This document shows, piece after piece, positions 608-64,000 of a stretch of DNA of 64,000 nt. Under the pieces are notes generated by a model. The model searched no databases, was not told the origin of the DNA, and saw only the letters and a list, made by a program, of their open reading frames with translations. Each line of letters opens with the position of its first letter. Positions within the stretch are counted from its first letter, which is position 1. The DNA is from Camelus dromedarius (Eukaryota), in NCBI RefSeq assembly GCF_036321535.1, contig NC_087437.1:120590001-120654000 (forward strand). The letters are read 5' to 3'. The position numbers and the translations under genes are program-made.

Positions 608-1050
608 TATTGTGGTGAAACACACACACATTAACTTTACCATGAGTGACGTTTAGCACCTTCACCGTGTTGTGCAATCATCTCTGTGTAGTTCCAGAAC
701 ATTTCCACCACCCGAACGGAATTTGTACCCACGACCAGTCACTCCCCACCCCAGCCTCCTCCCCCGACACCCACTAATCTCTGTCTGCTGTTTTCTGGGT
801 ATTTCTTATCAATGGGCACGCACAGTGCGTGGCCTCTTGTGTCTGACGTCCTCCCCTCACTGAGCAGAATGTTCTCGAGGCTCGTGTGCGCCGCCCTGCG
901 GGTCTGCGCTCCTCTCTCTTCCTGCCTGAGTCTATTCTGCCGTGTGGATGGACCGCACTGTTTATCCATCATCTGCCGGTGGACATTTGAGTTGTTTCTA
1001 CCTTTTGCTGCAGTGAAAGGTGCTGCTGTGAACACAGGAGCACAAGTTTT
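608..1050 (-). mobile_element. Old L1 (L1MB/MC-type) 3' end
   Basis: TTGTGGTGAAACAC...GGACATTTGAGTTGTTTCTACCTTTTGCTG...GCTGCTGTGAACA are typical antisense L1 3' motifs. Confidence 0.75.
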
Positions 1051-1762
1051 TCCCCTCCAGCTTCACTGAGATACAACTGACACACAGTGTGTATGTATGT
1101 GTGCGTTTGAGGGGGACAGCCCCACGATCTCACCTGCATGCACCATGAAGTGATTGCCACAGTAGGTTCAGTGACCACCCGTCAGCTCCCATAGGGACAA
1201 AATTAGAGAAACGGGAAAATAATGTCCCCTTCTGGTGAGAACTCAGGGTTTTCTCTCGGCAGCTCTCATATGTAACACGCAGTGGTGTTAATTACACTTC
1301 TCACGTGGGACATTCCCCCCCGCACTTCCCTGCCTTATATCTGGACGTTTGTACCTTTTGGCCACCTTCATCTAATTCCCCCTCTGCCCACCCCTGCTCT
1401 GGTAACCACAAATCTGGTCTCTTTTTCTATGAATTTCTTTTTGAAGTATAATTGACCTGCAACACTGTGTTAATTCCTGTTACACAACACAGTCGTTCCA
1501 TATTTCTCTACATTTCAAAACACTCACCAGGATAAGTCTAGTTATGAGGTGTCACCACGCAAAGATGTCGCACAGTAATTGACTGTATTCCCCAGGCTGT
1601 ACATTTCATCCTCACAACTCATTTATTTTGCAACTGGAAGTTTGTCCCTCTTAATCTCCCTCACCTAGTTCTCTTCTCCTCTCTCCTTCCCCTCTGGCAA
1701 CCACCTGTTTGTTCTCTGCGGGTTTGTTTTCTGCGGGTTGTTTGTGGGTTCCGTCCGGCAGA

Positions 1763-2389
1763 AGTCCCACCGTGACGGAATGAATGACTCGAGACTCTGT
1801 GGAAAGTCAGGAGAGCGAGAGGGAGTTGGAGGCCAACCCCCCGAGCCTCTCAAACACTCTCATGTTTATTGTGCGCAAAGAAAAGACCACAAACAGTTGT
1901 GTCATGGAACACAGGAGCTTACGGAAAAGCAGGGGCGGGTAGAGATCGTAAATTCCACGAGTGCAAAGGCTTAATTCGCCCTCAGGGCAGTCACGGGGGC
2001 AGAGGAACAAGGTACATTCTTCAGATATAAGAAGCTGACTACAAAACAGACCACCAGCCCGCCAGCTCCTGTCCTGGGGGGTAGGCCATCTAAACAGCAG
2101 AAAGCACGCCCGGCGTTTCAGGCTGAGGGCACGGGCTGTCGCTTTGCAACGAGCAGAGTAAACCCTGGGCTGTGGACCTAAGCTTAAAACAAGCCACGTC
2201 CTGCGTTTGTAACAAGGGACACACAATGGCGCGTCCATTACGGAAGCAGCCCCAAGCTGGAACCTCAGCTGTGCAAGCAAGGCATCGTGTCTGCTTTTCA
2301 CAGCAAGGAGACAGGAGTGCGACGCACGGACGCCTGCCAGCAAAGCACGTTTGTTCTTCCTAAAGGTCGCAAGCGGCTGGGGTCCGTTA
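1763..2389 (-). mobile_element. Solo ERV LTR nested in the L1 3'UTR
   Basis: The minus strand begins TGTAACGG and ends TCCGTCA (TG...CA termini), ~627 bp, with AATAAA (rc at 1865-1870) in the expected position. No clear TSD. Confidence 0.7.
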
Positions 2390-3299
2390 CAGTGTATCAG
2401 CCCAGCCAGGGGCCCTCACCCCCGCTCGCCTGTTTTGCGTTTTAATTCCACGTGTAAGGGAAGTCATGCAGCCTTTGTCTCTCTGTGTCTGACTTACTTC
2501 CCTTAGCGTGACACCCTCCAGGTCCTCCGTGTGGTATCAACTGGCGAAACCCCATTCTTTTCATGGCTGAGGAGGATCCCACTGTGGACACAGAGGCAGC
2601 GTACAGACGGGCTTGTTTCTGGGACCATCCAGCCGCTGTGAGCGGGGCATTTCGCCCATGTGCACTTGAAGCGTCGTTGGCAGGTGCGAACTTACGGCCA
2701 CTCTGTTCGTTGTTTTCAGGTGTTTTTGGTCCTTCTTTTTCAGTCCTGTCTTCTTCCGTCCTCTTCCCTTGTGCTTTGATGACTGTGTCTAGTGTTACGT
2801 TTGGATTTCTTTCCCTTTTGTGTGTGTACCAACCGTGGATTTTTGGTTTGTGGTTGCTGTGATGTGTGTCTGTCTGTATACGCACGTATGCACGTGTGTA
2901 TACGTGATAATTTTAAGTCGCTTGTCTCTTAATTTCAAACGCATTTGGACGACCCTGCCTTTCACTCGCCTCCCGCCGCGTCCGCTGTGTTTGGGGTCCG
3001 GTTTTACGTCTGATCGTCGCGCGCCCCGTGCTGCCCAGCCTGCGGCTGATGGCCTTCCTCCTTTGTCCTTTAATTGTCCCACTCGCTTTGGGCGTGGTTC
3101 CTTCGCTGCCTTGGCTGTGCGTTCGCCTTCACGGTGAGCTTTCTCCTCTCATGATGTTCACGTTTCTAGTTGTGGCCTTTTCTTTCTCGCTCGGAGAAGT
3201 TCCTTTAACGTTTATTTTATTTATTCTTCCTTTAGCATTTCTCGTACAGCTGGCTCGGGGTGCTGAGCTCTTTTAGCTTCCGCTTGTCTGCGGAATTTT

Positions 3300-4100
3300 G
3301 ACTTCGGGGTCAGCTCGGAGGGAGAGCCTCGCTGGGCGAAGCACGCTCGGCCGCAGGGCTTTCCTTTCAGCAGCTTAACCGCGCCGGCCGCTGCCCTCTG
3401 GCCGCAGAGCTTCCGCTGAGAAGGCGGCGCGCGGCCGGCGTGCTTCCGCTGCTGCCGCGCCGAACGCGACGCCCTCCCGTGTCCCGGACTCCGCCGGCTT
3501 ACTCGCAGGGCCTCGCGCGCTGCTCTCCGGGCTGCTCCTGCGTCGGGCTCTGCGCCTCGTGGGCTGCGGCGACCGGCCGGCGCCGCCGGGGAGGCCGGTT
3601 TTCAGCGGCCAGCCTGAGAGCGCGCTCCCCGCCCGGCCCTCCGCCTGCCCTGCCGGGGGCGCCTGCACGGCGCGTGCCGGGGCGCGCCCGCCGAGGCCCC
3701 GCCGGGCCTGAAGCCCGCCTCGTTCCTTTCATCGCTCTTCGCTTCGCCTTCCGTCCAGGCGCAGAGCCTCCGCGCCGCCCAGCGCCCTGCTTCTCCTCCC
3801 GGCCTGCTTTTCATCTCGCTCGCGGTTTTCCTCGGCTCTTTGTTGTTGTTCTTCGTGTTTTCTAGCTCTTTGCTGAAAACGTCTGACTCCGGCTCTGCGC
3901 GCGCGCCGCTCTCCCGAGGCCTCTGCCCGGCCTCGCGGGTCACGGCCTGGCGCTCCTTGCAGGGAGGCTCCGGTCTCCGCCGCGCTCAGCCCTGGGCTTT
4001 TACCTGCCTCCTTCATTTGGACCGCGCTCCTCTGCTGCTCCATCGTGTCTCGTTTGCTGCTTTTATGTCCAGGTGCCCAGGAGCTTTGTTATTTTTCCTG
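3300..4100. other. CpG-island-like tract derived from L1 ORF1
   Basis: Hand counts: 49/60 G+C at 3601-3660 and 52/60 at 3661-3720, with dense CpG; overlaps the L1 ORF1 relic. Confidence 0.85.
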
Positions 4101-4204
4101 ATCCTGGACAAGGAGACTGTGGTGTCCTAAACCCTCCCTGGCGAGCGGCCCCCAGAACGCGGTCCCCTCGGCTCTCCAGAGCCACTCTCTGCCCCCATCA
4201 CCAC

Positions 4205-4345
4205 CCACGCTTTGTGGACTCACATACTAATTTATTAAAATATTGAAATAAAATATTGTTTATCTCACTGCTGAGTTTTTGGCACCCCCTTAAATTTTTC
4301 ACCCGAATGAGCAAGGCTCCCCCTGAGCCCCTCCCTTGGCCCCTG
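4205..4345. mobile_element. MER45-like hAT-Tip100 DNA transposon fragment
   Basis: TAATTTATTAAAATATTGAAATAAAA...CTGCTGAGTTTTTGGCACCCCCTTAAATTTT resembles the MER45B/C terminal region. Confidence 0.6.
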
Positions 4346-4869
4346 GGGGATGGGGGACCCCAGCCACACCCTGGGGCCTAGTGGGGTGGGAGCGTCGGGA
4401 GGAGGGGACCCTGCGGTGGGGCCTGGACGACCCGGGCGGGCGGGCAGCTGGCGAGGCCTGCGGTCCCTACCCTGTCCCTGTCCCTGTCCCCGCTGGAGGA
4501 GGCTGAGGCCGGTGACTCCGGTCCTCAGATGCCTGCCCAGCCCCAGTGCTGCGCTAACGGGTTTCATTTCCTAAGAAGTAAAAACAGAACAAAGCAAAAG
4601 CCAAACAAGGGCATGCTGGGGCAGCGAAGGAAGCGAGATGGAGCTGGTGAACGGCAGCCGCCTCCAGAGTGTGTTCACCTCCTTTCTTCTCCTCCTCGAG
4701 CTCCTCTTTGAGTAGAAAGGGCCTGGAAAGTGAGCTCGGACCCCGACTGTGAGCGTGTGAGTGTGCGTGCGGGTGTGTTAGAGTGGGGATGTGAGCGTGC
4801 AAAAAAGCCAATTCCAAACAGTTGATACAGACGCTTCCTTCTAGAAAGCATCCTTAAAATGGCACAACA

Positions 4870-5135
4870 GTGGGTACAGAGGGCAGATGGGTGGTTGGTG
4901 GGGACAGCAGTGAAGAGCTGAGGCTACAGAAGGAGAGCAGGAGGGACCTGGTGGGGACGTGGGGACCAGGGGACGGGATGGTCCGTAACAGCGTCAGTGC
5001 CAGCGTCCTGGTCTGATACTGCACTGCACTCTGCAACATGTTCCCATTCAAGGAGACTGAATAAAGAAACTCTCTGTTATTTCTTACAACAGCATGTAAA
5101 TCTACCATTACCTCAGAGTAAAAAGTTTAATAATA
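4870..5135 (+). mobile_element. L1MC-type 3' end
   Basis: TATTTCTTACAACAGCATGTAAATCTACCATTACCTCAGAGTAAAAAGTT matches the L1MC terminal motif, followed by an A-rich tail. Confidence 0.7.
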
Positions 5136-7755: not shown

Positions 7756-8250
7756 TGCAGATTTCAACTCCCAATTTATCCCTTCCTGCTCTCTCCTCCC
7801 TGGTCACCGTAAGTCTGTTTTCTACATCTGCAAGTCTGTTTCTGTTTTGTAAATAAGTTCATTTGTGTCTTTTTTTTAGATTGCACATAAAAGCGACATC
7901 ATACGGTATTTTTCTTTCTCTGTCTGACTTACTTCACATAGAATGACGATCTCCAGGTCCATCCGTGTTGCTGCAAATGGCACTATTTCATTATTTTTTA
8001 TGGCTGAGTAGTGTTCCAGCGTACATGTCTGTATCACATCTTCTTTATCCAGTACTGACGTGCGGTTGATTTACAATGCTGAGTTAGTTTCTGGTGTACA
8101 GCACACTGATTCAGTCATGCACACACATACATACATTCGTTTTCATATTCTTTTCCATTACAGGCCATTACAAGGTTTTGAATACGGTTCCCTGTGCTGC
8201 ACTGTAGGTCCTTGCTGTCTGTCTATTTTGTACATGGTGGTTTACATCCA
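7755..8250 (-). mobile_element. Cetartiodactyl L1 3' end, in two pieces with swapped order
   Basis: 7755-8053 (AACTCCCAATTTATCCC...TTCTTTATCC) precedes 8060-8250 (GTTGATTTACAATG...TTTACATCC), the reverse of the remembered consensus order. Confidence 0.75.
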
Positions 8251-25549: not shown

Positions 25550-26195
25550 GTTAACAGAAATGCATGGCAGCCCGTGTGGAAAATGGTACTGCACTTCCTC
25601 ACGGAATTAAACATAGAATTCCCACGTGATCCAGCAGCCCCGCTTCTGGGCATAAACTCAAAAGAAGTGAAAGCAGGGTCTCAAACAGAGATTTGCACAC
25701 CCATGTCCACATCAGTGTTACTCACAACAGCCAAGGGGTGAAAACAACCTAAGAGTCCACGGATGGACGGATNNNNNNNNNNNNNNNNNNNNNNNNNNNN
25801 NNNNNNNNNNNNNNNNNNNNNNNNNNNNNNNNNNNNNNNNNNNNNNNNNNNNNNNNNNNNNNNNNNNNNNNNNNNNNNNNNNNNNNNNNNNNNNNNNNNN
25901 NNNNNNNNNNNNNNNNNNNGATCACTTACATCAGGTCCCTGGAGGAGACAGACTCACGGAGACAGAAAGCAGGGAGTGGAGGGCCAGGGGCCGGGGGAGG
26001 GAGGAGGAGTGAGTGTTTAATGGGGACAGAGTGTCTGTTGGGAAGATGGAAATTCTGGAGACGATGGTGGTGATGGTTGCCCAACAGCGTGAATGGACTG
26101 AGTGCCACTGGCTGCACTCAGCTCCCAGTGGGTAGAATGGTAAATGTCGTTAGTGGTAAATGTCGTGTTACGGATGTTTTACTCCAATGATAAAG
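25550..26195 (+). mobile_element. L1MB 3' end containing an N-run
   Basis: AATTAAACATAGAATTCCCACGTGATCCAGCA...GAGACAGAAAGCAG...TTTAATGGGGACAGAG...GTGGTGATGGTTGC. Confidence 0.85.
25773..25919. other. Assembly gap (147 N)
   Basis: N-run. Confidence 1.
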
Positions 26196-42420: not shown

Positions 42421-43508
42421 CATGTCTTCTTTTTCAAGGGTAAGAGAATTGTGAGTAAAACAGGTGCAGGTATGTTTATTTTATTTTAGTCTAGGTGTTT
42501 TCTGAAATAATTTGAGGAGGCTTAAAATAAGGCACAGCAGAGAGTGACAGCACCTGGTATTTTAAATAGCTTTGGGATGAAACTCATCCAAGTGCAGGAG
42601 GTCCAGCTTGGACCTGAGGGCCTGAGCAGGCGCAGGTCCCACGGAGGCAGGGAGCAGGCAGGAGAGCGGAGATGGCCCTCCGTCATCCTTAACAATCCAG
42701 TGGCAGGACAGCCCTCCCTGGCCGCTCCCCGGGTGCCTGATGGGCGATGCAGGCAGCCCTGTTCCGCGGCTCTGATGACTCTCTTCCAGGAGGGGCTGTG
42801 GTTACTGACCACAGGGGAGGGGTGGGGCTAGGAGGCCGGTTCAGGGCGACAATCCTCCCCTCAACCTCCGGGAACCCCATCCCCCCAATTCGGGAGGCTT
42901 CCTCCAGGGTCAAGTAGGATACAATGTTGCCGGGTGCCAACTATAAATAAGTCAAAGTGCGACGGGGTTGGGTCCTGATCCCCGCGTGGACCGGTGGCTC
43001 CCCAGGACCCCCCAACCCCCGAGTAACCCCGGACAGTAACATGAACTGGGGGAATCTCACGCCGGGGAACACCCCCAAGTGCCCGCAGAGGGGGCTCTGA
43101 AGAGATGAGGGCTCTGGGCGGTCCCCACTGCCCTCCCTCGCCCTGTGACTCGCCGCCTCCATGCAGTGCCCCTGGCCCTACGTCCAGTCCCCCGTCTGTG
43201 TCCCCAGCCAGACCCCCTCCCTGCACCCCCAATCCCTCCTTAGACTCACCTAGCTGAGCCCGCACCCCACGTGCTTCTGGCTCCAAGCTCGCCGGATCCT
43301 CCAGCCCCGTCCGTTTCTGGACCCCAGCCAGGCCGCCCACCCCGGGTGTCCCCTTGTTCTCCTACCGCGTCCCCTGTCCCCTGGTGCCTCGTGTCCCCCA
43401 CCCCCGCTGAACCGCTGTACCTCCCAGTCCCCCTGGCGTATCTCCCCCACGTGTTCCCCCCAACCTCCCCCCCGAGTGTGCCCCTAGCGTGTTTCCCCTG
43501 CCGGACTC

Positions 43509-43590
43509 CGTGTCCCCCTGTCGCCCCCCCCGCGTGTCCCCCACGTGTCCCCCTGTCGCCCCCCCCGCGTGTCCCCCCGCGTGTCCCCGC
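43509..43590 (+). repeat. Tandem repeat in the promoter: 35-bp unit CGTGTCCCCCTGTCGCCCCCCCCGCGTGTCCCCC(A/C), two copies plus a partial
   Basis: Read directly; further GTGTCCCC-like motifs occur at ~43345-43460. Confidence 0.85.
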
Positions 43591-43713
43591 CGCCCCGCGC
43601 GCCGGCGGAACTGTGGGATCGCCGCGCACAGGAAGTGGCGGGGCGGCGCGGCCGAGGGCGGAGGGCGGCGGGCCGGGCGGGGCGGGATGGGGGCCGGGGG
43701 CGGCGGGCGCCGC

Positions 43714-43830
43714 ACTCGCTGAGGCCCGACGCAGGGCCGGGCGCGCCCAGGGCCGGAGCGCGGCGGCCGGAGCGGCCCGGAGGCGACGCCGGGGGCCACG
43801 CGCGCGACGAGCAGGTGGCGGCGGCTGCAG
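43714..43830 (+). other. AGPAT3: Non-coding exon 1 (5'UTR) of 1-acylglycerol-3-phosphate O-acyltransferase 3
   Basis: ACTCGCTGAGGCCCGACGCAGGGCCGG...GCGCGACGAGCAGGTGGCGGCGGCTGCAG closely matches my recollection of the first ~120 nt of human AGPAT3 mRNA. It ends at a consensus donor CAG|GTGAGC (43831) inside a CpG island. TSS approximate; not database-verified. Confidence 0.75.
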
Positions 43831-44610
43831 GTGAGCGGCGGGGCCCCCGCGAGGTCGGCCCCCTCCCCTCCCCGCCGCCGGAGGTCGGGGACCCTCCCCG
43901 CTGCCCCTGTCACCACCCCCACCGCGACCCGGGCCCCGCGCCGCCGCAGTGGGCCGGCTGCGCTCCTCCTGCGGGAGGCCTGCGGGCGGACGGGGGCTGG
44001 GGTCCGCGGGCCCCGGGCTCCCTCCCGGCCTCCCCGGGGCCCCGTCCGGCCAGGCCCAGGCCTGGTCCCCGTCCCTGCCGGCCCGCCTGGGGCGCTGCAG
44101 CCGGGCGCGCTGGGCCCGGGCTGCGCGCGGCCGGGGCAGGGGCGCCCGGGAGGGGCGGGCGGGCCGCCGGGCGACCGGGCTGGGCGAGGGGCGACATCGC
44201 CGCCCGCTCCCCAAGGACTTTCGCAGGCCCGCTGCTCCCCGAGGACATACGCGCCCCTCGCCCGCCTTCGGGGCGCTGGGACCGAGGGCCCCGCGCGCCC
44301 CCGACCCTGCGCGCTGCGGCCACGGTCTAGTTTCACTTTTTGCTCAGCCCGGAGGGAGGGCTGCAGGCGGGACTGCAAGGGGGTGCGTGCTGACTCTCCA
44401 GATTTGACTTTGGCGTCTGGACCAAAGGCCGACGGTGAATCTCCACGGTTCCAGTCAGGTGATGGGGTCAGTCAATAACCTAGGAGCCCCTTAGGAGGAA
44501 AGCCACCTCCACCCCCAGGGCCGCCTGGAGGACCCGGGAACCTGGGATTCCAAGGGTCTCAGGAAAAGAGGGTGATGAGCCGTTGAAGCTACCTTGAAAA
44601 ATTGTGCAGA

Positions 44611-61209: not shown

Positions 61210-64000
61210 TGCCCTGGCTGAGTGGGAAATGGGGTGCATGATTCTAGCATCCACTGCTAACCGTGATGGGATGACAGGGACTGGATTTCACCCCCAACTG
61301 AAACATGGGAAAACCAAACCAAAGTACGTGAAGCTGCAGACTTCAAACAGTGCACAACAGGAGCCCGGGGCGGTGACCCCTGACAGGGCAGGAGTGGGGG
61401 GCCGCCCTCCAGCTTAGCACCGGCAGCATCCGCGGAGCACAGGGCGGCGGGGCAGACCACGTTGGGCTAGAATCAGTGGACAGGAGTACTGGAGAGGCTA
61501 GGACTGCATGAATAAAATGCTCTGGGGAGCCGAGGGGCCCCAGGCTGAGGCTGCTTGTTGATCCGCGCACGTGTGTGGGAATCCCACCAAGGTTGGGAGA
61601 GCCTCGAAAGGAGGAGGTGAACAAGTCCCTTAGTTCACACAGGGCTGCAAGGAAGTTAGTGTTCTCACCCGCCAGGTGGAAGGAGTCCCAATTCAAAGGG
61701 CATCGGCTAGGGTCCCCATAGCCCTCAACACAAGCCCCCCCCAGGACTCACCTAAACAAAGCTTGAAACAAGCCTTGAAAGGGTCAGACCACTCTGAGTA
61801 AGGTAACTGCACCCCTGAAAAGAGCCTGACAGCGTTTGAGGGGCTGCAGCAAAGCCGGGCCTTCAACACATCGTGTTCACAGTGTCCCGGAACCAAGCAA
61901 GCAGCACTCGGCATACACACGAGTGGAGAAGCGTAACCCAGAAGATGAGAAAAGTCAGTTATCAGAAACAGATCTGGGTGGATCCACAACCTCCCAGATG
62001 ATAGAATTGGCAGAAAAGGATGTTAAAATGTGTGTTATAAATGTGCTGCGTGTGTTCAATGTCACAGAGAAAATACGAACAAGATGGGCAAATGGAGGCT
62101 ATAAAAAAGACCCGAGTCTCCTGAAGAGGAAGACATAGTGGGCGGGGTCACAGCAGGTCCCACGCTGCAGAGGCGGGGTCAGGGTTCTTGAACATCCAGC
62201 ACTGGGAACTTTCTAACACGAAACACAGGAAAAAGACAGGGGAAAAAGGAATGGCACCAGCGCACCACGAGAAGAGAAACAGGTATGAACGTGGATTCCA
62301 GAAAAAGGCGTGTGTGGTGGAAAATGTTTGAAAGAAATAATGGGTAAGATTTTTGCAAATTTGATGAAAACTTATTTTTCAAGATCAATCAATCCTAAGC
62401 AGAAGAAATATAAAGAAAACAAACCAATCATAATCAAATTTCTGGAAATCTTAATAGCAGAAGATCTTAAAAGCAGTCAGAGGCAAAAACCTACAGTGTT
62501 CAGAGAAAACCAAGGTGAAATCTCAGCGGACTTCTTACCAGGAGCTCTGCAGCCAAAGACGGTGGAGGGGCATCTTTAAAATGCAGCCTGCAGTCCCACA
62601 GCCACAGAATCCCTTTCCAAAGTGAAGGCAAAATAAAGACTTCTTCAGATATTCGGAAGCTGAAAAAATTAATCATCCCTGACTTTGCAAACCCAGATAG
62701 GACAGGTAGAAAGAGGATAGATTTAATCCCGGCCATGTCAATGATCACATCAAATTGTGGATGGCCTGAAAACTCCAAATAAAAGGCATTGTGTCAGAGT
62801 ATCAGATCAGATTAAAAAAACATTAGGTAAAAGTGCTTTCCACATTAAATATAAAGACACAGATAGGTTAAAAGTAAAAGGTTAGAAAAATAGATACCAT
62901 TGATTGCAAATATGAGTCAAAGGGTAATCCAAGTAGATAGATGAGTATGGGACAAGGCAGATTTCAGGACAGGAAATGTTACCAGGGATGAGAGCGGTAC
63001 CTCGTGGTGATCAGAGGGCTCCGTTCACCCAGAGAACGTAGCACTGAGTGAGTACGCGCCTAATGAGAGCTTCAAGATACACAGAGCGAAAACTGACAGG
63101 ACTGAAAGGGGAGTTAGGTGAACCCACCACTGTAGCTGGATATTTCGACACTCCTCTTTCAATAATCGAGAGGAAATCAGTAAAGATGTGGAAGGCTTGA
63201 ATAGCACCACCAATCCATGGAGCACCCCGTCCAAACAGCAGAATGCGTACTCTTTGCATGTACGTGGACCTTTCACCAAGGTGGACCAAATTTGGGCCGA
63301 AAAGCAAATCTTTTTTTTTTTTTTTTTAACATTTTTTATTAACAAATCTTGATAAATGAAAAAGGACTGAAACCTTACAAAGATTTCTCTGACCAACAGA
63401 GAATTAAACTAGAAATCAGTAATTAAAAGGTATCTGGACCCCCCCCCAAATATTTGAAAACTAAATGAACACACTTCTAAATAACCCAGAGGGAGAATCA
63501 CGAGGGAGACTGGACAGCGTTTTGAACTGACTGAGAATTACAACAACGCAGCAGGTTTTGTGGAATGCGAGTAAAAGCAGTGCTTAGAAATGAGTAGCAT
63601 TATTATATCAGAACATAAAACAGGCCTCAAATCAATGATTCAAACTTCAACCTTAAGAAAAAATAAAGAGCAAAGAGCAGAAATCAATGAAATAGAAAAT
63701 GAACAAAAGAAGAAAAATCAATGACACTGAAAGCTGTTTCTGTGAAAGAATCATTAAAATTGATAAACCCCTAGTTGGACTGATCAGAAAAAAGAGGGAG
63801 AGAAGAGGAAGTACCACAATCAGGAATGAGAGAGGAGGCATCGCTACGAGCCCTACAGGTGCTACAATGGTGGTCAGGGAGTATCATGAAGCACTCGATG
63901 CTGAGAAATGTTTGCCACATGGACGAAAGGGGCAGATTCCTGGAACAAAACAAATCACTAAAACTCACTCAAGTCAAAGTAGACAACCCAAGTAACCCTG
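61210..64000 (+). mobile_element. Old L1 (L1MC/MD-type) 5'UTR, ORF1 and ORF2 start, continuing past the window
   Basis: Translations QMIELAEKDVK, IMGKIFANLMK and KINDTESCFCERIIKIDKPLVGLIRKKRE...IRNERGGI align to L1 ORF1p/ORF2p; frameshifted. Confidence 0.85.

What the first reader, a model, noticed from the sequence alone, without database searches (positions are those of the whole stretch)
3300..4100. L1 ORF1 relic turned into a CpG-island-like tract by directional A/T-to-G/C change
Seen: the minus strand still translates to L1 ORF1p motifs, yet the DNA is 82-87% G+C at 3601-3720 with dense CpG, and falls to ~30% GC at 3181-3240 within the same element. Established: L1 ORF1 is A-rich (around 40% GC) and old L1s normally lose CpG; the CpG-rich part of L1 is the 5'UTR, not ORF1. 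Against a remembered consensus the differences include A>G, T>C and A>C (TTTTTCAGCAGAAACTTTGC becomes CTTCTCAGCGGAAGCTCTGC; CCTACAACCAAGAATAC becomes CCTGCGGCCGAGCGTGC). Inference: a ~0.8-kb peak of weak-to-strong substitution fits a long-lived recombination hotspot with GC-biased gene conversion in germline-unmethylated DNA. This would be a CpG island, and possibly a promoter, born from a TE coding region.
Basis: partly seen in the sequence, partly recalled or inferred. Interest (0 to 1): 0.75.

Follow-up and report, generated by a model that had tools for sequence, protein, structure and literature searches.

The report
L1 gene relic rewritten into CpG island
In this camel genome, about 0.8 kb of a dead L1 retrotransposon gene (ORF1) has had more than half of its A/T bases replaced by G/C, creating about 100 new CpG sites; this is a clear new example of a process already described in dogs and other mammals, most likely GC-biased repair at a long-lived recombination hotspot.

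Summary
Positions 3601-3720 are 84% G+C and 3181-3240 are 32%. Positions 3300-4100 are 70% G+C with CpG observed/expected 1.05.

The L1 ORF1 origin is now tested. Pfam, a PDB search and protein searches see nothing in the relic. But six natural L1 copies fetched here, whose ORF1 Pfam recognises, align colinearly with the minus strand from 4112 to 2838 (E 4e-8 to 2e-33). The GC core also aligns better than shuffles (z about 5-6).

Those copies have ORF1 at 36-40% G+C with 3-10 CpG. The relic has 69% G+C and 107 CpG, nearly all of them new.

At sites where the copies agree, the relic shows 131 A/T-to-G/C changes against 8 the other way. The control copies show 4-15 against 5-20. Equilibrium GC is 0.92 for the relic and 0.32 for the controls. 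The changes are strand-symmetric and include transversions, which excludes RNA editing.

GC-biased gene conversion in germline-unmethylated DNA is the best explanation (about 0.7). It is inferred: recombination, methylation and promoter use were not measured.

The CpG-rich zone is larger than reported (1679-4180).

First readers of this scan noted similar GC spikes in other L1/MIR relics of this genome; those notes are unchecked.

This is a known kind of process, described in dog and other placentals, with a new member here.

The parts
1679..4180 (.). CpG island by sequence criteria (2502 bp, 59% G+C, 199 CpG, o/e 0.92). It contains the whole L1 relic.
   Evidence: Sliding 200-bp scan with G+C>=0.55 and o/e>=0.65. 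CpG o/e falls to 0.2-0.5 beyond 4200 although G+C stays high at 4301-4500.
3221..4043 (-). Relic of L1 ORF1, from the aligned start codon at 4041-4043 to the stop near 3221-3223. It is broken by frameshifts and in-frame stops (3729-3731, 3375-3377, 3273-3275). 70% G+C, 105 CpG.
   Evidence: Colinear BLASTN matches to Pfam-verified ORF1 copies L008-L013; shuffle tests for the core; alignment blocks; frames; composition.
3400..3720 (.). Main core of weak-to-strong replacement: 65-80% of ancestral A/T sites are now G/C; G+C 75-88%.
   Evidence: 80-bp profile against L009; composition.
3880..3959 (.). Second core (72% of A/T sites replaced, 78% G+C). A dip at 3800-3879 (35% replaced, 47% G+C) separates it from the main core.
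4044..4112 (-). Last ~69 nt of the L1 5'UTR. The alignment to L1 ends at 4112, so the element is 5'-truncated or unalignable beyond that point.
   Evidence: BLASTN 3794-4112 against L009 892-1211, with the L009 ORF1 start at 961. No match of 4100-5070 to any reference.
2700..3220 (-). L1 spacer between ORF1 and ORF2 (a long-spacer type of L1). It is also shifted: W>S 32-55 against S>W 11-12 per bin.
   Evidence: BLASTN to L013 (2838-3422), L009 (3048-3422) and L010 (2818-2938, 3126-3207); counts.
2567..2671 (-). Possible first ~100 nt of L1 ORF2 (weak).
   Evidence: Local alignment to L007 6927-7032, z=3.7, with the largest shuffle score slightly above the observed score. Inconclusive.
2441..2586 (-). 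Fragment of the 3' end of L1 ORF2, joined to the piece above. This is either an internal deletion of about 3.6 kb or a second fragment. It shows a milder shift: G/C here against A/T in the paralogue at 24 sites, the reverse at 7.
   Evidence: BLASTN to window 7874-8018 (72%, E 7e-18) and to L007 10573-10721; asymmetry count.

Best explanation
An L1 element inserted on the minus strand tens of millions of years ago. It was 5'-truncated just upstream of ORF1 and now lacks most of ORF2. The DNA around it came to lie in a kilobase-scale zone that stays unmethylated in the germline and receives meiotic double-strand breaks generation after generation. This would be a stable hotspot of the promoter-like, PRDM9-independent kind. 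Repair of heteroduplex DNA favours G/C over A/T alleles, so weak-to-strong mutations of every type were fixed far more often than others. Because the DNA was unmethylated, the CpGs made in this way (CA>CG, TG>CG, TA>CG) did not decay. The result is a sequence-defined CpG island written into a former coding region.

Shown here: the L1 ORF1 origin; the direction, size, strand symmetry and local extent of the substitutions; the de novo origin of the CpGs.

Inferred: recombination as the cause, the unmethylated state, and the long life of the hotspot.
For: 1. Direction and size. At sites where at least 5 natural L1 copies agree (relic 3227-3800), 131 of 237 A/T sites are now G/C and 8 of 124 G/C sites are now A/T. 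Six control copies scored the same way show 4-15 and 5-20. Fisher p = 1e-88 for W>S. Equilibrium GC is 0.92 against 0.32.
2. All weak-to-strong classes rise on both strands: A>G 0.37, T>C 0.42, A>C 0.16, T>G 0.13, with no strand difference (p 0.48 and 0.70). A fixation bias for G/C predicts this. A single mutational process does not.
3. The effect is local. The replaced share is 0.65-0.80 at 3400-3720 and falls to 0.2-0.5 toward both ends. Seven other L1-derived stretches in the same window have 36-49% G+C, six of them with CpG o/e 0.23-0.51.
4. CpG o/e is about 1 over 2.5 kb, even in AT-rich parts of the relic (3201-3300: 42% G+C, o/e 1.14). About 100 CpGs are new and the references have 3-10.
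5. From the two rate ratios, e^B = 24.9/0.97, so the time-averaged B is about 3. This lies in the range the literature treats as strong hotspot gBGC (values quoted in PMC4510005).
6. The same process is documented elsewhere. In dogs gBGC generated many new CpG islands, mostly away from genes (PMC4350167). PRDM9-independent hotspots in hypomethylated DNA act in many placental mammals (PMC11161765).
7. A second organism label holds 99% of the sampled words of the stretch, so the state is shared by at least one close relative and is not an assembly artefact. DNA runs of several studies hold it in full.
Against: - No recombination map, DMC1 or H3K4me3 data, methylation data or polymorphism spectrum was available, so the cause is inferred from its footprint.
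- S>W at ancestral G/C sites is not lower than in the control copies (0.067 against 0.069 per site). Pure gBGC over equal time would lower it. The fit needs a 2- to 10-fold larger mutation input or age for the relic.
- G<>C changes are also raised (20 of 124 sites), which gBGC does not predict.
- The profile is not a smooth bell.
- The high CpG o/e zone ends where the L1 relic ends (about 4112-4180). This could mean something bound to the element rather than a hotspot placed at random.
- The references come from contigs of unknown hosts, not from a curated camel subfamily consensus.
Confidence: 0.7

Rival explanations
1. The island is above all a working promoter or enhancer (for example of a transcript expressed in reproductive tissue). 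Selection for CpG-island function, not a neutral conversion bias, drove or maintained the G/C gain.
For: - RNA runs from three studies hold 32-64% of the sampled words of 2600-4600 although each run is only 0.18-0.85 Gb. That is hard to explain by DNA carry-over.
- The G-rich strand is the minus strand over 3600-4200, as seen downstream of many CpG-island start sites (my knowledge).
- An AATAAA with a U-rich stretch lies on the + strand at about 4249-4285.
Against: - More than 130 substitutions spread evenly over all W>S classes and over 1.5 kb is not what selection on binding sites gives.
- The shift also covers the spacer and a separate ORF2 fragment.
- Two protein word-searches with long open frames of the core, one per strand, found no called product from any assembly.
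- Promoter-like chromatin is also the expected cause of a PRDM9-independent hotspot, so this reading overlaps with the best explanation rather than replacing it.
Confidence: 0.12
2. A local mutational bias without any fixation bias. Error-prone repair of recurrent breaks, or another lesion-repair process in open unmethylated chromatin, produced mostly A/T-to-G/C mutations that then drifted to fixation.
For: - G<>C changes are raised about 9-fold and S>W is not lowered relative to controls, so mutation input does seem raised.
- Dog CpG islands mutate 2.6 times faster than the genome average (PMC12465969).
- Meiotic break repair is mutagenic (PMC7615360).
Against: - W>S is raised about 25-fold but S>W about 1-fold. 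No known break-repair spectrum is that one-sided in all four W>S classes (my knowledge).
- A<>T changes are raised only about 2-fold (5 of 237 sites against 14 of 1477).
Confidence: 0.1
3. The L1 RNA was hyper-edited (ADAR, A-to-I) before reverse transcription, so the copy was G-rich from the day it inserted.
For: A>G is the most numerous single change on the L1 sense strand (86 sites), because that strand is 46% A.
Against: - Per-site rates are the same for T>C (0.42) as for A>G (0.37), and transversions to G/C are common (47 sites).
- The shift grades within the element.
- It also affects a separate ORF2 fragment.
Confidence: 0.02
4. The relic belongs to an L1 subfamily whose ORF1 was GC- and CpG-rich, or the core is a foreign GC-rich insert inside an L1.
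For: - No curated camel subfamily consensus could be consulted.
- BLAST cannot align 3423-3793 to any reference.
Against: - All six closest copies have ORF1 at 36-40% G+C with CpG o/e 0.10-0.30.
- 2010 ORF1 proteins found by homology (E<=1e-10); all 120 listed carry the ordinary Pfam ORF1 domains.
- The core matches the colinear ORF1 stretch in length (371 against 436 nt). It scores z=6.1 and 5.2 over shuffles, while unrelated stretches give z<=0.5.
- The relic keeps the purine-rich sense strand of ORF1 (A+G 0.62 against 0.66-0.67).
Confidence: 0.03

Closest known systems
gBGC-generated non-promoter CpG islands and GC peaks of the dog genome (Berglund et al. 2014/15, PMC4350167)
   Same: Kilobase-scale G+C and CpG peaks away from known genes, produced by a weak-to-strong substitution excess in DNA that keeps its CpGs. 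The islands are 'detected' because gBGC raised their CpG richness.
   Different: - Dogs lack PRDM9. The state of PRDM9 in camels was not examined, and I found no paper on it in the library.
- The dog work is genome-wide statistics with an LD map. Here there is one locus, resolved base by base against its transposon ancestry, with no recombination data.
PRDM9-independent ('default') hotspots in germline-hypomethylated regions of placental mammals (Joseph et al. 2024, PMC11161765)
   Same: High equilibrium GC in narrow peaks at hypomethylated DNA, read from substitutions. Such hotspots persist over long times, and that persistence is needed to replace 55-70% of A/T sites.
   Different: - That study centres on loci homologous to mouse Prdm9-knockout break hotspots, mostly promoter-like features.
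- Camels are not named in its text.
- Whether this locus is such a hotspot is not known.
Biased clustered substitutions and gBGC tracts in primates (Capra et al. 2013, Katzman et al. 2011, as cited in PMC4510005)
   Same: Dense local runs of W>S substitutions that mimic selection.
   Different: Those tracts come from short-lived hotspots and change a small fraction of sites. Here more than half of all A/T sites over about 0.6 kb are replaced and a full CpG island results.
L1 5'UTR CpG-island promoters
   Same: CpG-rich L1-derived DNA.
   Different: The CpG-rich part here is ORF1 (start codon aligned at 4041-4043). Only about 69 nt of 5'UTR remain. In relatives this part has 3-10 CpG.

Membership tests
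L1 (LINE-1) ORF1 relic | Protein-level match to the ORF1 RRM-like domain (Pfam Transposase_22) and C-terminal domain (Tnp_22_dsRBD) | tested here: not met
   No Pfam family at E<=1 in any of ten stop-to-stop pieces. No PDB match. The best tblastn hit is a 43-residue stretch, 50% identical, E 2e-5. The coding sense has been destroyed by the substitutions.
L1 (LINE-1) ORF1 relic | Nucleotide homology, colinear over the gene, to bona fide ORF1 sequences | tested here: met
   Reference ORF1s carry both Pfam domains (E 1e-18 to 1e-22; and the gene tables). BLASTN gives E 2e-33, 4e-33 and 4e-8 on both sides of the core. The core is supported by shuffle tests, z 6.1 and 5.2.
L1 (LINE-1) ORF1 relic | L1 order of parts: 5'UTR, ORF1, spacer, ORF2, all on one strand | tested here: inconclusive
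   5'UTR end, ORF1 and spacer are in order on the minus strand. The ORF2 start is only weakly supported (z 3.7). The ORF2 3' end follows directly.
CpG island (sequence definition) | At least 500 bp with G+C >= 55% and CpG o/e >= 0.65 | tested here: met
   1679-4180: 2502 bp, 59% G+C, o/e 0.92. 3300-4100: 70% G+C, o/e 1.05.
CpG island (functional definition) | Unmethylated in the germline; start site of transcription | not testable with these tools
   Only indirect evidence: about 100 new CpGs persist, and RNA runs hold part of 2600-4600.
gBGC hotspot footprint | Excess of W>S over S>W in all classes, transitions and transversions alike, on both strands | tested here: met
   131 against 8. A>G 0.37, T>C 0.42, A>C 0.16, T>G 0.13. 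Equilibrium GC 0.92 against 0.32 in controls.
gBGC hotspot footprint | S>W substitutions lowered relative to neutral DNA | tested here: not met
   0.067 per site against 0.069 in the control copies. This fits only if mutation input or age is several-fold higher in the relic.
gBGC hotspot footprint | Kilobase-scale local peak | tested here: met
   Profile. Other L1 pieces in the window are ordinary.
gBGC hotspot footprint | Raised recombination or break frequency at the site; W>S alleles skewed to high frequency | not testable with these tools
   No map, ChIP or population data within reach.
ADAR-hyperedited retrocopy | A>G on the sense strand only | tested here: not met
   T>C per site equals A>G, and transversions are frequent.

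The most novel reading that the evidence does not exclude
Camels, like dogs, may run much of their meiotic recombination through stable hotspots in unmethylated DNA. If so, new CpG islands are being written into dead transposons across the genome. This one is transcribed in reproductive tissues and could be a promoter born from a transposon coding region. The conversion of the A-rich ORF1 sense strand into a G-rich strand may itself help to keep the island open.
Probability: 0.3. Interest if true: 0.65.

Novelty: new member of a known kind. Interest (0 to 1): 0.45.

Why it matters
It is an unusually clean case in which the ancestral sequence of a CpG island is known almost base by base, because the island was once a transposon gene. 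That lets one read off what made the island: about 55-70% of A/T sites replaced, equilibrium GC 0.92, nearly every CpG new, both strands alike.

It shows that sequence-defined CpG islands in camel annotation can be by-products of recombination rather than promoters.

Together with the other spikes that first readers noted in this genome, it points to a testable question: how much camels rely on long-lived, PRDM9-independent hotspots.

Tried and rejected
- Pfam on ten pieces of the relic and five pieces of an old L1 elsewhere in the window: nothing.
- PDB sequence search with four pieces: nothing.
- Protein word search with a minus-strand and a plus-strand open frame of the core: no relatives, hence no orthologous or RNA-derived products.
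- Exact look-up of five ATG-started ORFs: not in the collection.
- DNA pattern from the spacer: only chance hits in viral contigs, none in metagenome contigs.
- Self-comparison of the window by blastn and tblastx: only compositional hits to the island at 43.5 kb. The old L1 at 61.8-64 kb is too distant to serve as a reference.
- The first reference obtained (L007, bat-like L1) aligns only at 3200-3367. It gives z 4.7 for 3368-3720 and no signal for the N-terminal half. It was replaced by closer copies.
- A purine/pyrimidine-tolerant score was no better than plain matching.
- The transition:transversion ratio in the core is not independent evidence, because shuffles give a similar ratio from strand composition alone.
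- Tandem repeats, Rfam and bacterial promoter scans: nothing relevant.
Where the RNA lies, and how organism B differs, could therefore not be seen.
The local BLAST databases, on the closed machine, still held the whole window.
- N runs were left alone.
Only counts were made at sites where natural copies agree.

Full report
**What is there**

Positions 3601-3660 are 81.7% G+C, 3661-3720 are 86.7% and 3181-3240 are 31.7%. The stated range 3300-4100 is 70.4% G+C with 103 CpG, observed/expected 1.05 (searches give the same picture). The whole window is GC-rich (54.3%). Even so, only two places reach 82% G+C over 120 bp: this one and a large island at 43.5-44.2 kb. The tract is not a tandem repeat and matches no Rfam family.

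A scan with the usual island criteria (G+C >= 55%, o/e >= 0.65) gives one island of 2502 bp at 1679-4180, with 199 CpG and o/e 0.92. The feature is therefore larger than reported. CpG o/e stays near 1 even in the AT-rich parts of the element (3201-3300: 42% G+C, o/e 1.14). It drops to 0.2-0.5 beyond 4200, although G+C is high again at 4301-4500.

**Is it L1 ORF1?**

By eye the minus strand recalls ORF1, but that is a memory, not a test, and profile tools see nothing:
- Pfam gives no family at E<=1 for ten stop-to-stop pieces.
- PDB phmmer gives nothing.
- Word-based protein searches with open frames of the core on either strand find no relative.

I therefore needed real L1 DNA from a tool.
- An old AT-rich L1 at 61.8-64 kb in the same window supplied an ORF2 piece.
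- An exhaustive protein search with that piece led through one hit to locus L007, an NCBI assembly.
- L007 holds a full L1 whose ORF1 carries Pfam Transposase_22 and Tnp_22_dsRBD (E about 1e-22).
- The C-terminal half of that ORF1 found 2010 ORF1 proteins.
- I ranked the 120 listed proteins against the relic and fetched the contigs of the closest ones, L008 to L013. These come from ENA and JGI assemblies of unknown host. Their ORF1 products (182-288 residues) are closest to peccary, pig and horse entries. None was taken for human.

Against these copies the relic aligns on its minus strand and in order:
- 3794-4112 with L009 892-1211 (57%, E 4e-8). This is the end of the 5'UTR and the start of ORF1.
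- 3048-3422 with L009 1648-2006 (64.5%, E 2e-33).
- 2838-3422 with L013 (61%, E 4e-33). This is the end of ORF1 and the spacer.

All BLAST alignments stop at 3422-3428, where the GC core begins. The gap between the anchors is 371 nt in the relic and 436 nt in L009. A global alignment of these two stretches scores z=6.1 above 300 block shuffles that keep local composition. The same core against two unrelated stretches gives z -1.7 and 0.5. When the shuffled core is re-added to the multiple alignment, it yields 137.5 +/- 6 identical sites (maximum 147) against 169 observed. The core is therefore eroded ORF1, not a foreign insert.

The start codon aligns at 4041-4043 and the stop near 3221-3223. 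Frameshifts and three in-frame stops break the frame. Only about 69 nt of 5'UTR remain, so the CpG-rich part is not the L1 promoter. Below the spacer there is a weak match to the first 100 nt of ORF2 (z 3.7). After that comes the 3' end of ORF2 directly (2441-2586).

**Direction of change**

Over the ORF1 columns:

| | G+C | CpG | CpG o/e | Base shares |
|---|---|---|---|---|
| Six references | 36-40% | 3-10 | 0.10-0.30 | 45-46% A |
| Relic | 69% | 107 | 1.06 | A 23%, G 39%, C 31%, T 8% |

Pairwise, every reference and every bin shows the same thing. Against L009 in the well-aligned 3227-3422 there are 47 W>S, 2 S>W, 0 W<>W and 4 S<>S differences.

At columns where at least five references agree (relic 3227-3800), the relic and the controls compare as follows. 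Each control is one reference scored against the other references.

| Change | Relic | Six controls |
|---|---|---|
| W>S | 131 of 237 A/T sites (93 transitions, 38 transversions) | 4-15 |
| S>W | 8 of 124 G/C sites | 5-20 |
| A<>T | 5 | not broken out here |
| G<>C | 20 | not broken out here |

Corrected for saturation, W>S is 0.80 per site against 0.032 in controls (Fisher p 1e-88). S>W is 0.067 against 0.069. Equilibrium GC is 0.92 against 0.32.

Per-base rates on the L1 sense strand are symmetric: A>G 0.37, T>C 0.42, A>C 0.16, T>G 0.13 (p 0.48 and 0.70).

Of the roughly 100 CpGs in the relic, the reference dinucleotide is CA (27), TA (19), TG (12), AA (11) or AG (10). It is CG in one or two cases only.

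One caution. In the core the W>S count is partly forced by composition, and the transition:transversion ratio is no independent proof there, because shuffles give a similar ratio. The well-aligned flanks carry the argument for direction, and the shuffle tests carry the argument for homology.

**Extent and shape**

The share of ancestral A/T sites now G/C:
- 0.29-0.51 in the spacer
- 0.20 at 3160-3239
- 0.36-0.51 at 3240-3399
- 0.65-0.80 at 3400-3720
- 0.35 at 3800-3879
- 0.72 at 3880-3959
- 0.37-0.50 at the 5' end

The separate ORF2 fragment at 2440-2581 differs from its paralogue at 7874-8018 by 24 sites where it has G/C against 7 the other way. Seven other L1-derived stretches in the window have 36-49% G+C, six of them with CpG o/e 0.23-0.51. 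The old L1 at 61.8-64 kb has 40-44% G+C and o/e 0.44-0.48.

**Mechanism**

A process that raises all four W>S classes alike on both strands, is confined to about 1.5-2.5 kb, and leaves new CpGs intact is what GC-biased gene conversion in unmethylated DNA predicts.

If the relic and the controls differ by a common factor k in mutation input or age, then e^B equals the W>S ratio divided by the S>W ratio, that is 24.9/0.97. This gives a time-averaged B of about 3.2 and k of about 7. My inference is that the bias is strong and sustained. For comparison, genome-wide B in humans is given as 0.2-0.36 and hotspot values as 5-6.5 (quoted in PMC4510005).

Replacing more than half of all A/T sites needs a hotspot that lasts. 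That points to the PRDM9-independent kind sited in hypomethylated, promoter-like DNA (PMC11161765), not to the short-lived PRDM9 kind.

The factor k, the raised G<>C changes (20 of 124 sites; 4 of 46 in the well-aligned part) and the unreduced S>W all suggest extra mutation at the site. That fits reports that meiotic break repair is mutagenic (PMC7615360) and that dog CpG islands mutate 2.6 times faster than average (PMC12465969). Some misalignment in the core may add to the G<>C count.

Recombination, methylation and hotspot age were not measured here.

**Rivals**

- RNA hyper-editing before insertion is excluded by strand symmetry and by the transversions.
- A GC-rich subfamily or a foreign insert is excluded for the copies available and by the shuffle tests. 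A curated camel consensus was not at hand.
- Pure mutational bias cannot easily give a 25-fold rise of W>S with no rise of S>W.
- Selection for promoter function does not explain an even rise of all W>S classes over spacer, ORF1 and a separate ORF2 piece. Promoter-like chromatin may, however, be the reason the breaks fall here.

**Transcription**

Six RNA runs of three studies (reproductive-tract samples and one further organism label) hold 32-64% of the sampled words of 2600-4600, though each run has only 0.18-0.85 Gb. DNA carry-over at such depth would not assemble a third or more of a 2-kb stretch, so part of it is probably transcribed (inference). The promoter idea is therefore open.

**Dating**

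A second organism label holds 99% of the words, so the state predates that split. Apart from W>S and G<>C changes the relic is about as far from the shared state as the reference copies are. Those copies differ from each other by 14-24%. This suggests an insertion tens of millions of years old (inference).

**Known or new**

- Placentals in general: PRDM9-independent hotspots depend on hypomethylation, and this explains the GC-richness of CpG islands (PMC11161765).
- Camels: they are not mentioned in that paper's text, and I found no paper on PRDM9 or hotspots in camelids.

Earlier first-reader notes of this scan describe similar GC/CpG spikes in L1 and MIR relics elsewhere in this genome (s1-178593, s1-172650, s1-182980). 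They are unchecked and I did not test them. Other notes name the genome as dromedary (for example s1-196063).

**Verdict**

A real, striking and now well-documented instance of a known process. It is a new member of a known kind, of moderate interest, with a testable genome-wide question behind it.

- N runs were left untouched.
They were masked in scripts; the local BLAST databases on the closed machine still held the whole window.
Only counts were made at sites where natural copies agree.

Noticed in passing
window 43215-44501: Large CpG island (1287 bp, 77% G+C, o/e 0.82). It is the only other place in the window with 120-bp stretches of at least 82% G+C, and is probably a gene promoter or first exon. 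Its long open frames are compositional.
   Followed up: no
window 61830-64000 (+): Old L1 with ORF1, the start of ORF2 and the ORF2 part up to about residue 420. It runs off the window end. It is AT-rich (40-44% G+C, CpG o/e 0.44-0.48), so it has decayed in the ordinary way 58 kb from the rewritten relic. Pfam does not see its ORF1 either.
   Followed up: partly
window 2567-2590 (-): The start of L1 ORF2 appears to be joined directly to the last ~150 nt of ORF2. This is either an internal deletion of about 3.6 kb in one element or two fragments in the same orientation.
   Followed up: partly
window 4230-4290 (+): Just past the island and the end of the L1 relic there is an AT-rich stretch with AATAAA followed by a U-rich run. 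It is a possible polyadenylation site for a plus-strand transcript crossing the island.
   Followed up: no
window 3227-3800: G<>C transversions are raised about 9-fold over control copies, while A<>T is raised only about 2-fold. This may be a footprint of break-repair mutagenesis, and partly an alignment effect.
   Followed up: partly
window 933-1038 (-), 7888-8022 (-), 25568-25771 (+): Further fragments of the 3' end of L1 ORF2. Where measured (the second and third) composition is ordinary (40-49% G+C).
   Followed up: no
window 2600-4600; runs X15-X20: RNA runs from reproductive-tract samples of three studies hold a third to two thirds of the sampled words of this stretch. Position and strand of the RNA could not be seen.
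   Followed up: partly
L007 5977-10717: The NCBI locus used as first reference holds a young full-length L1 with an open 1273-residue ORF2 and an ORF1 split into two overlapping frames. The annotated 84-kb 'gene' there is a chimera of L1 pieces.
   Followed up: no
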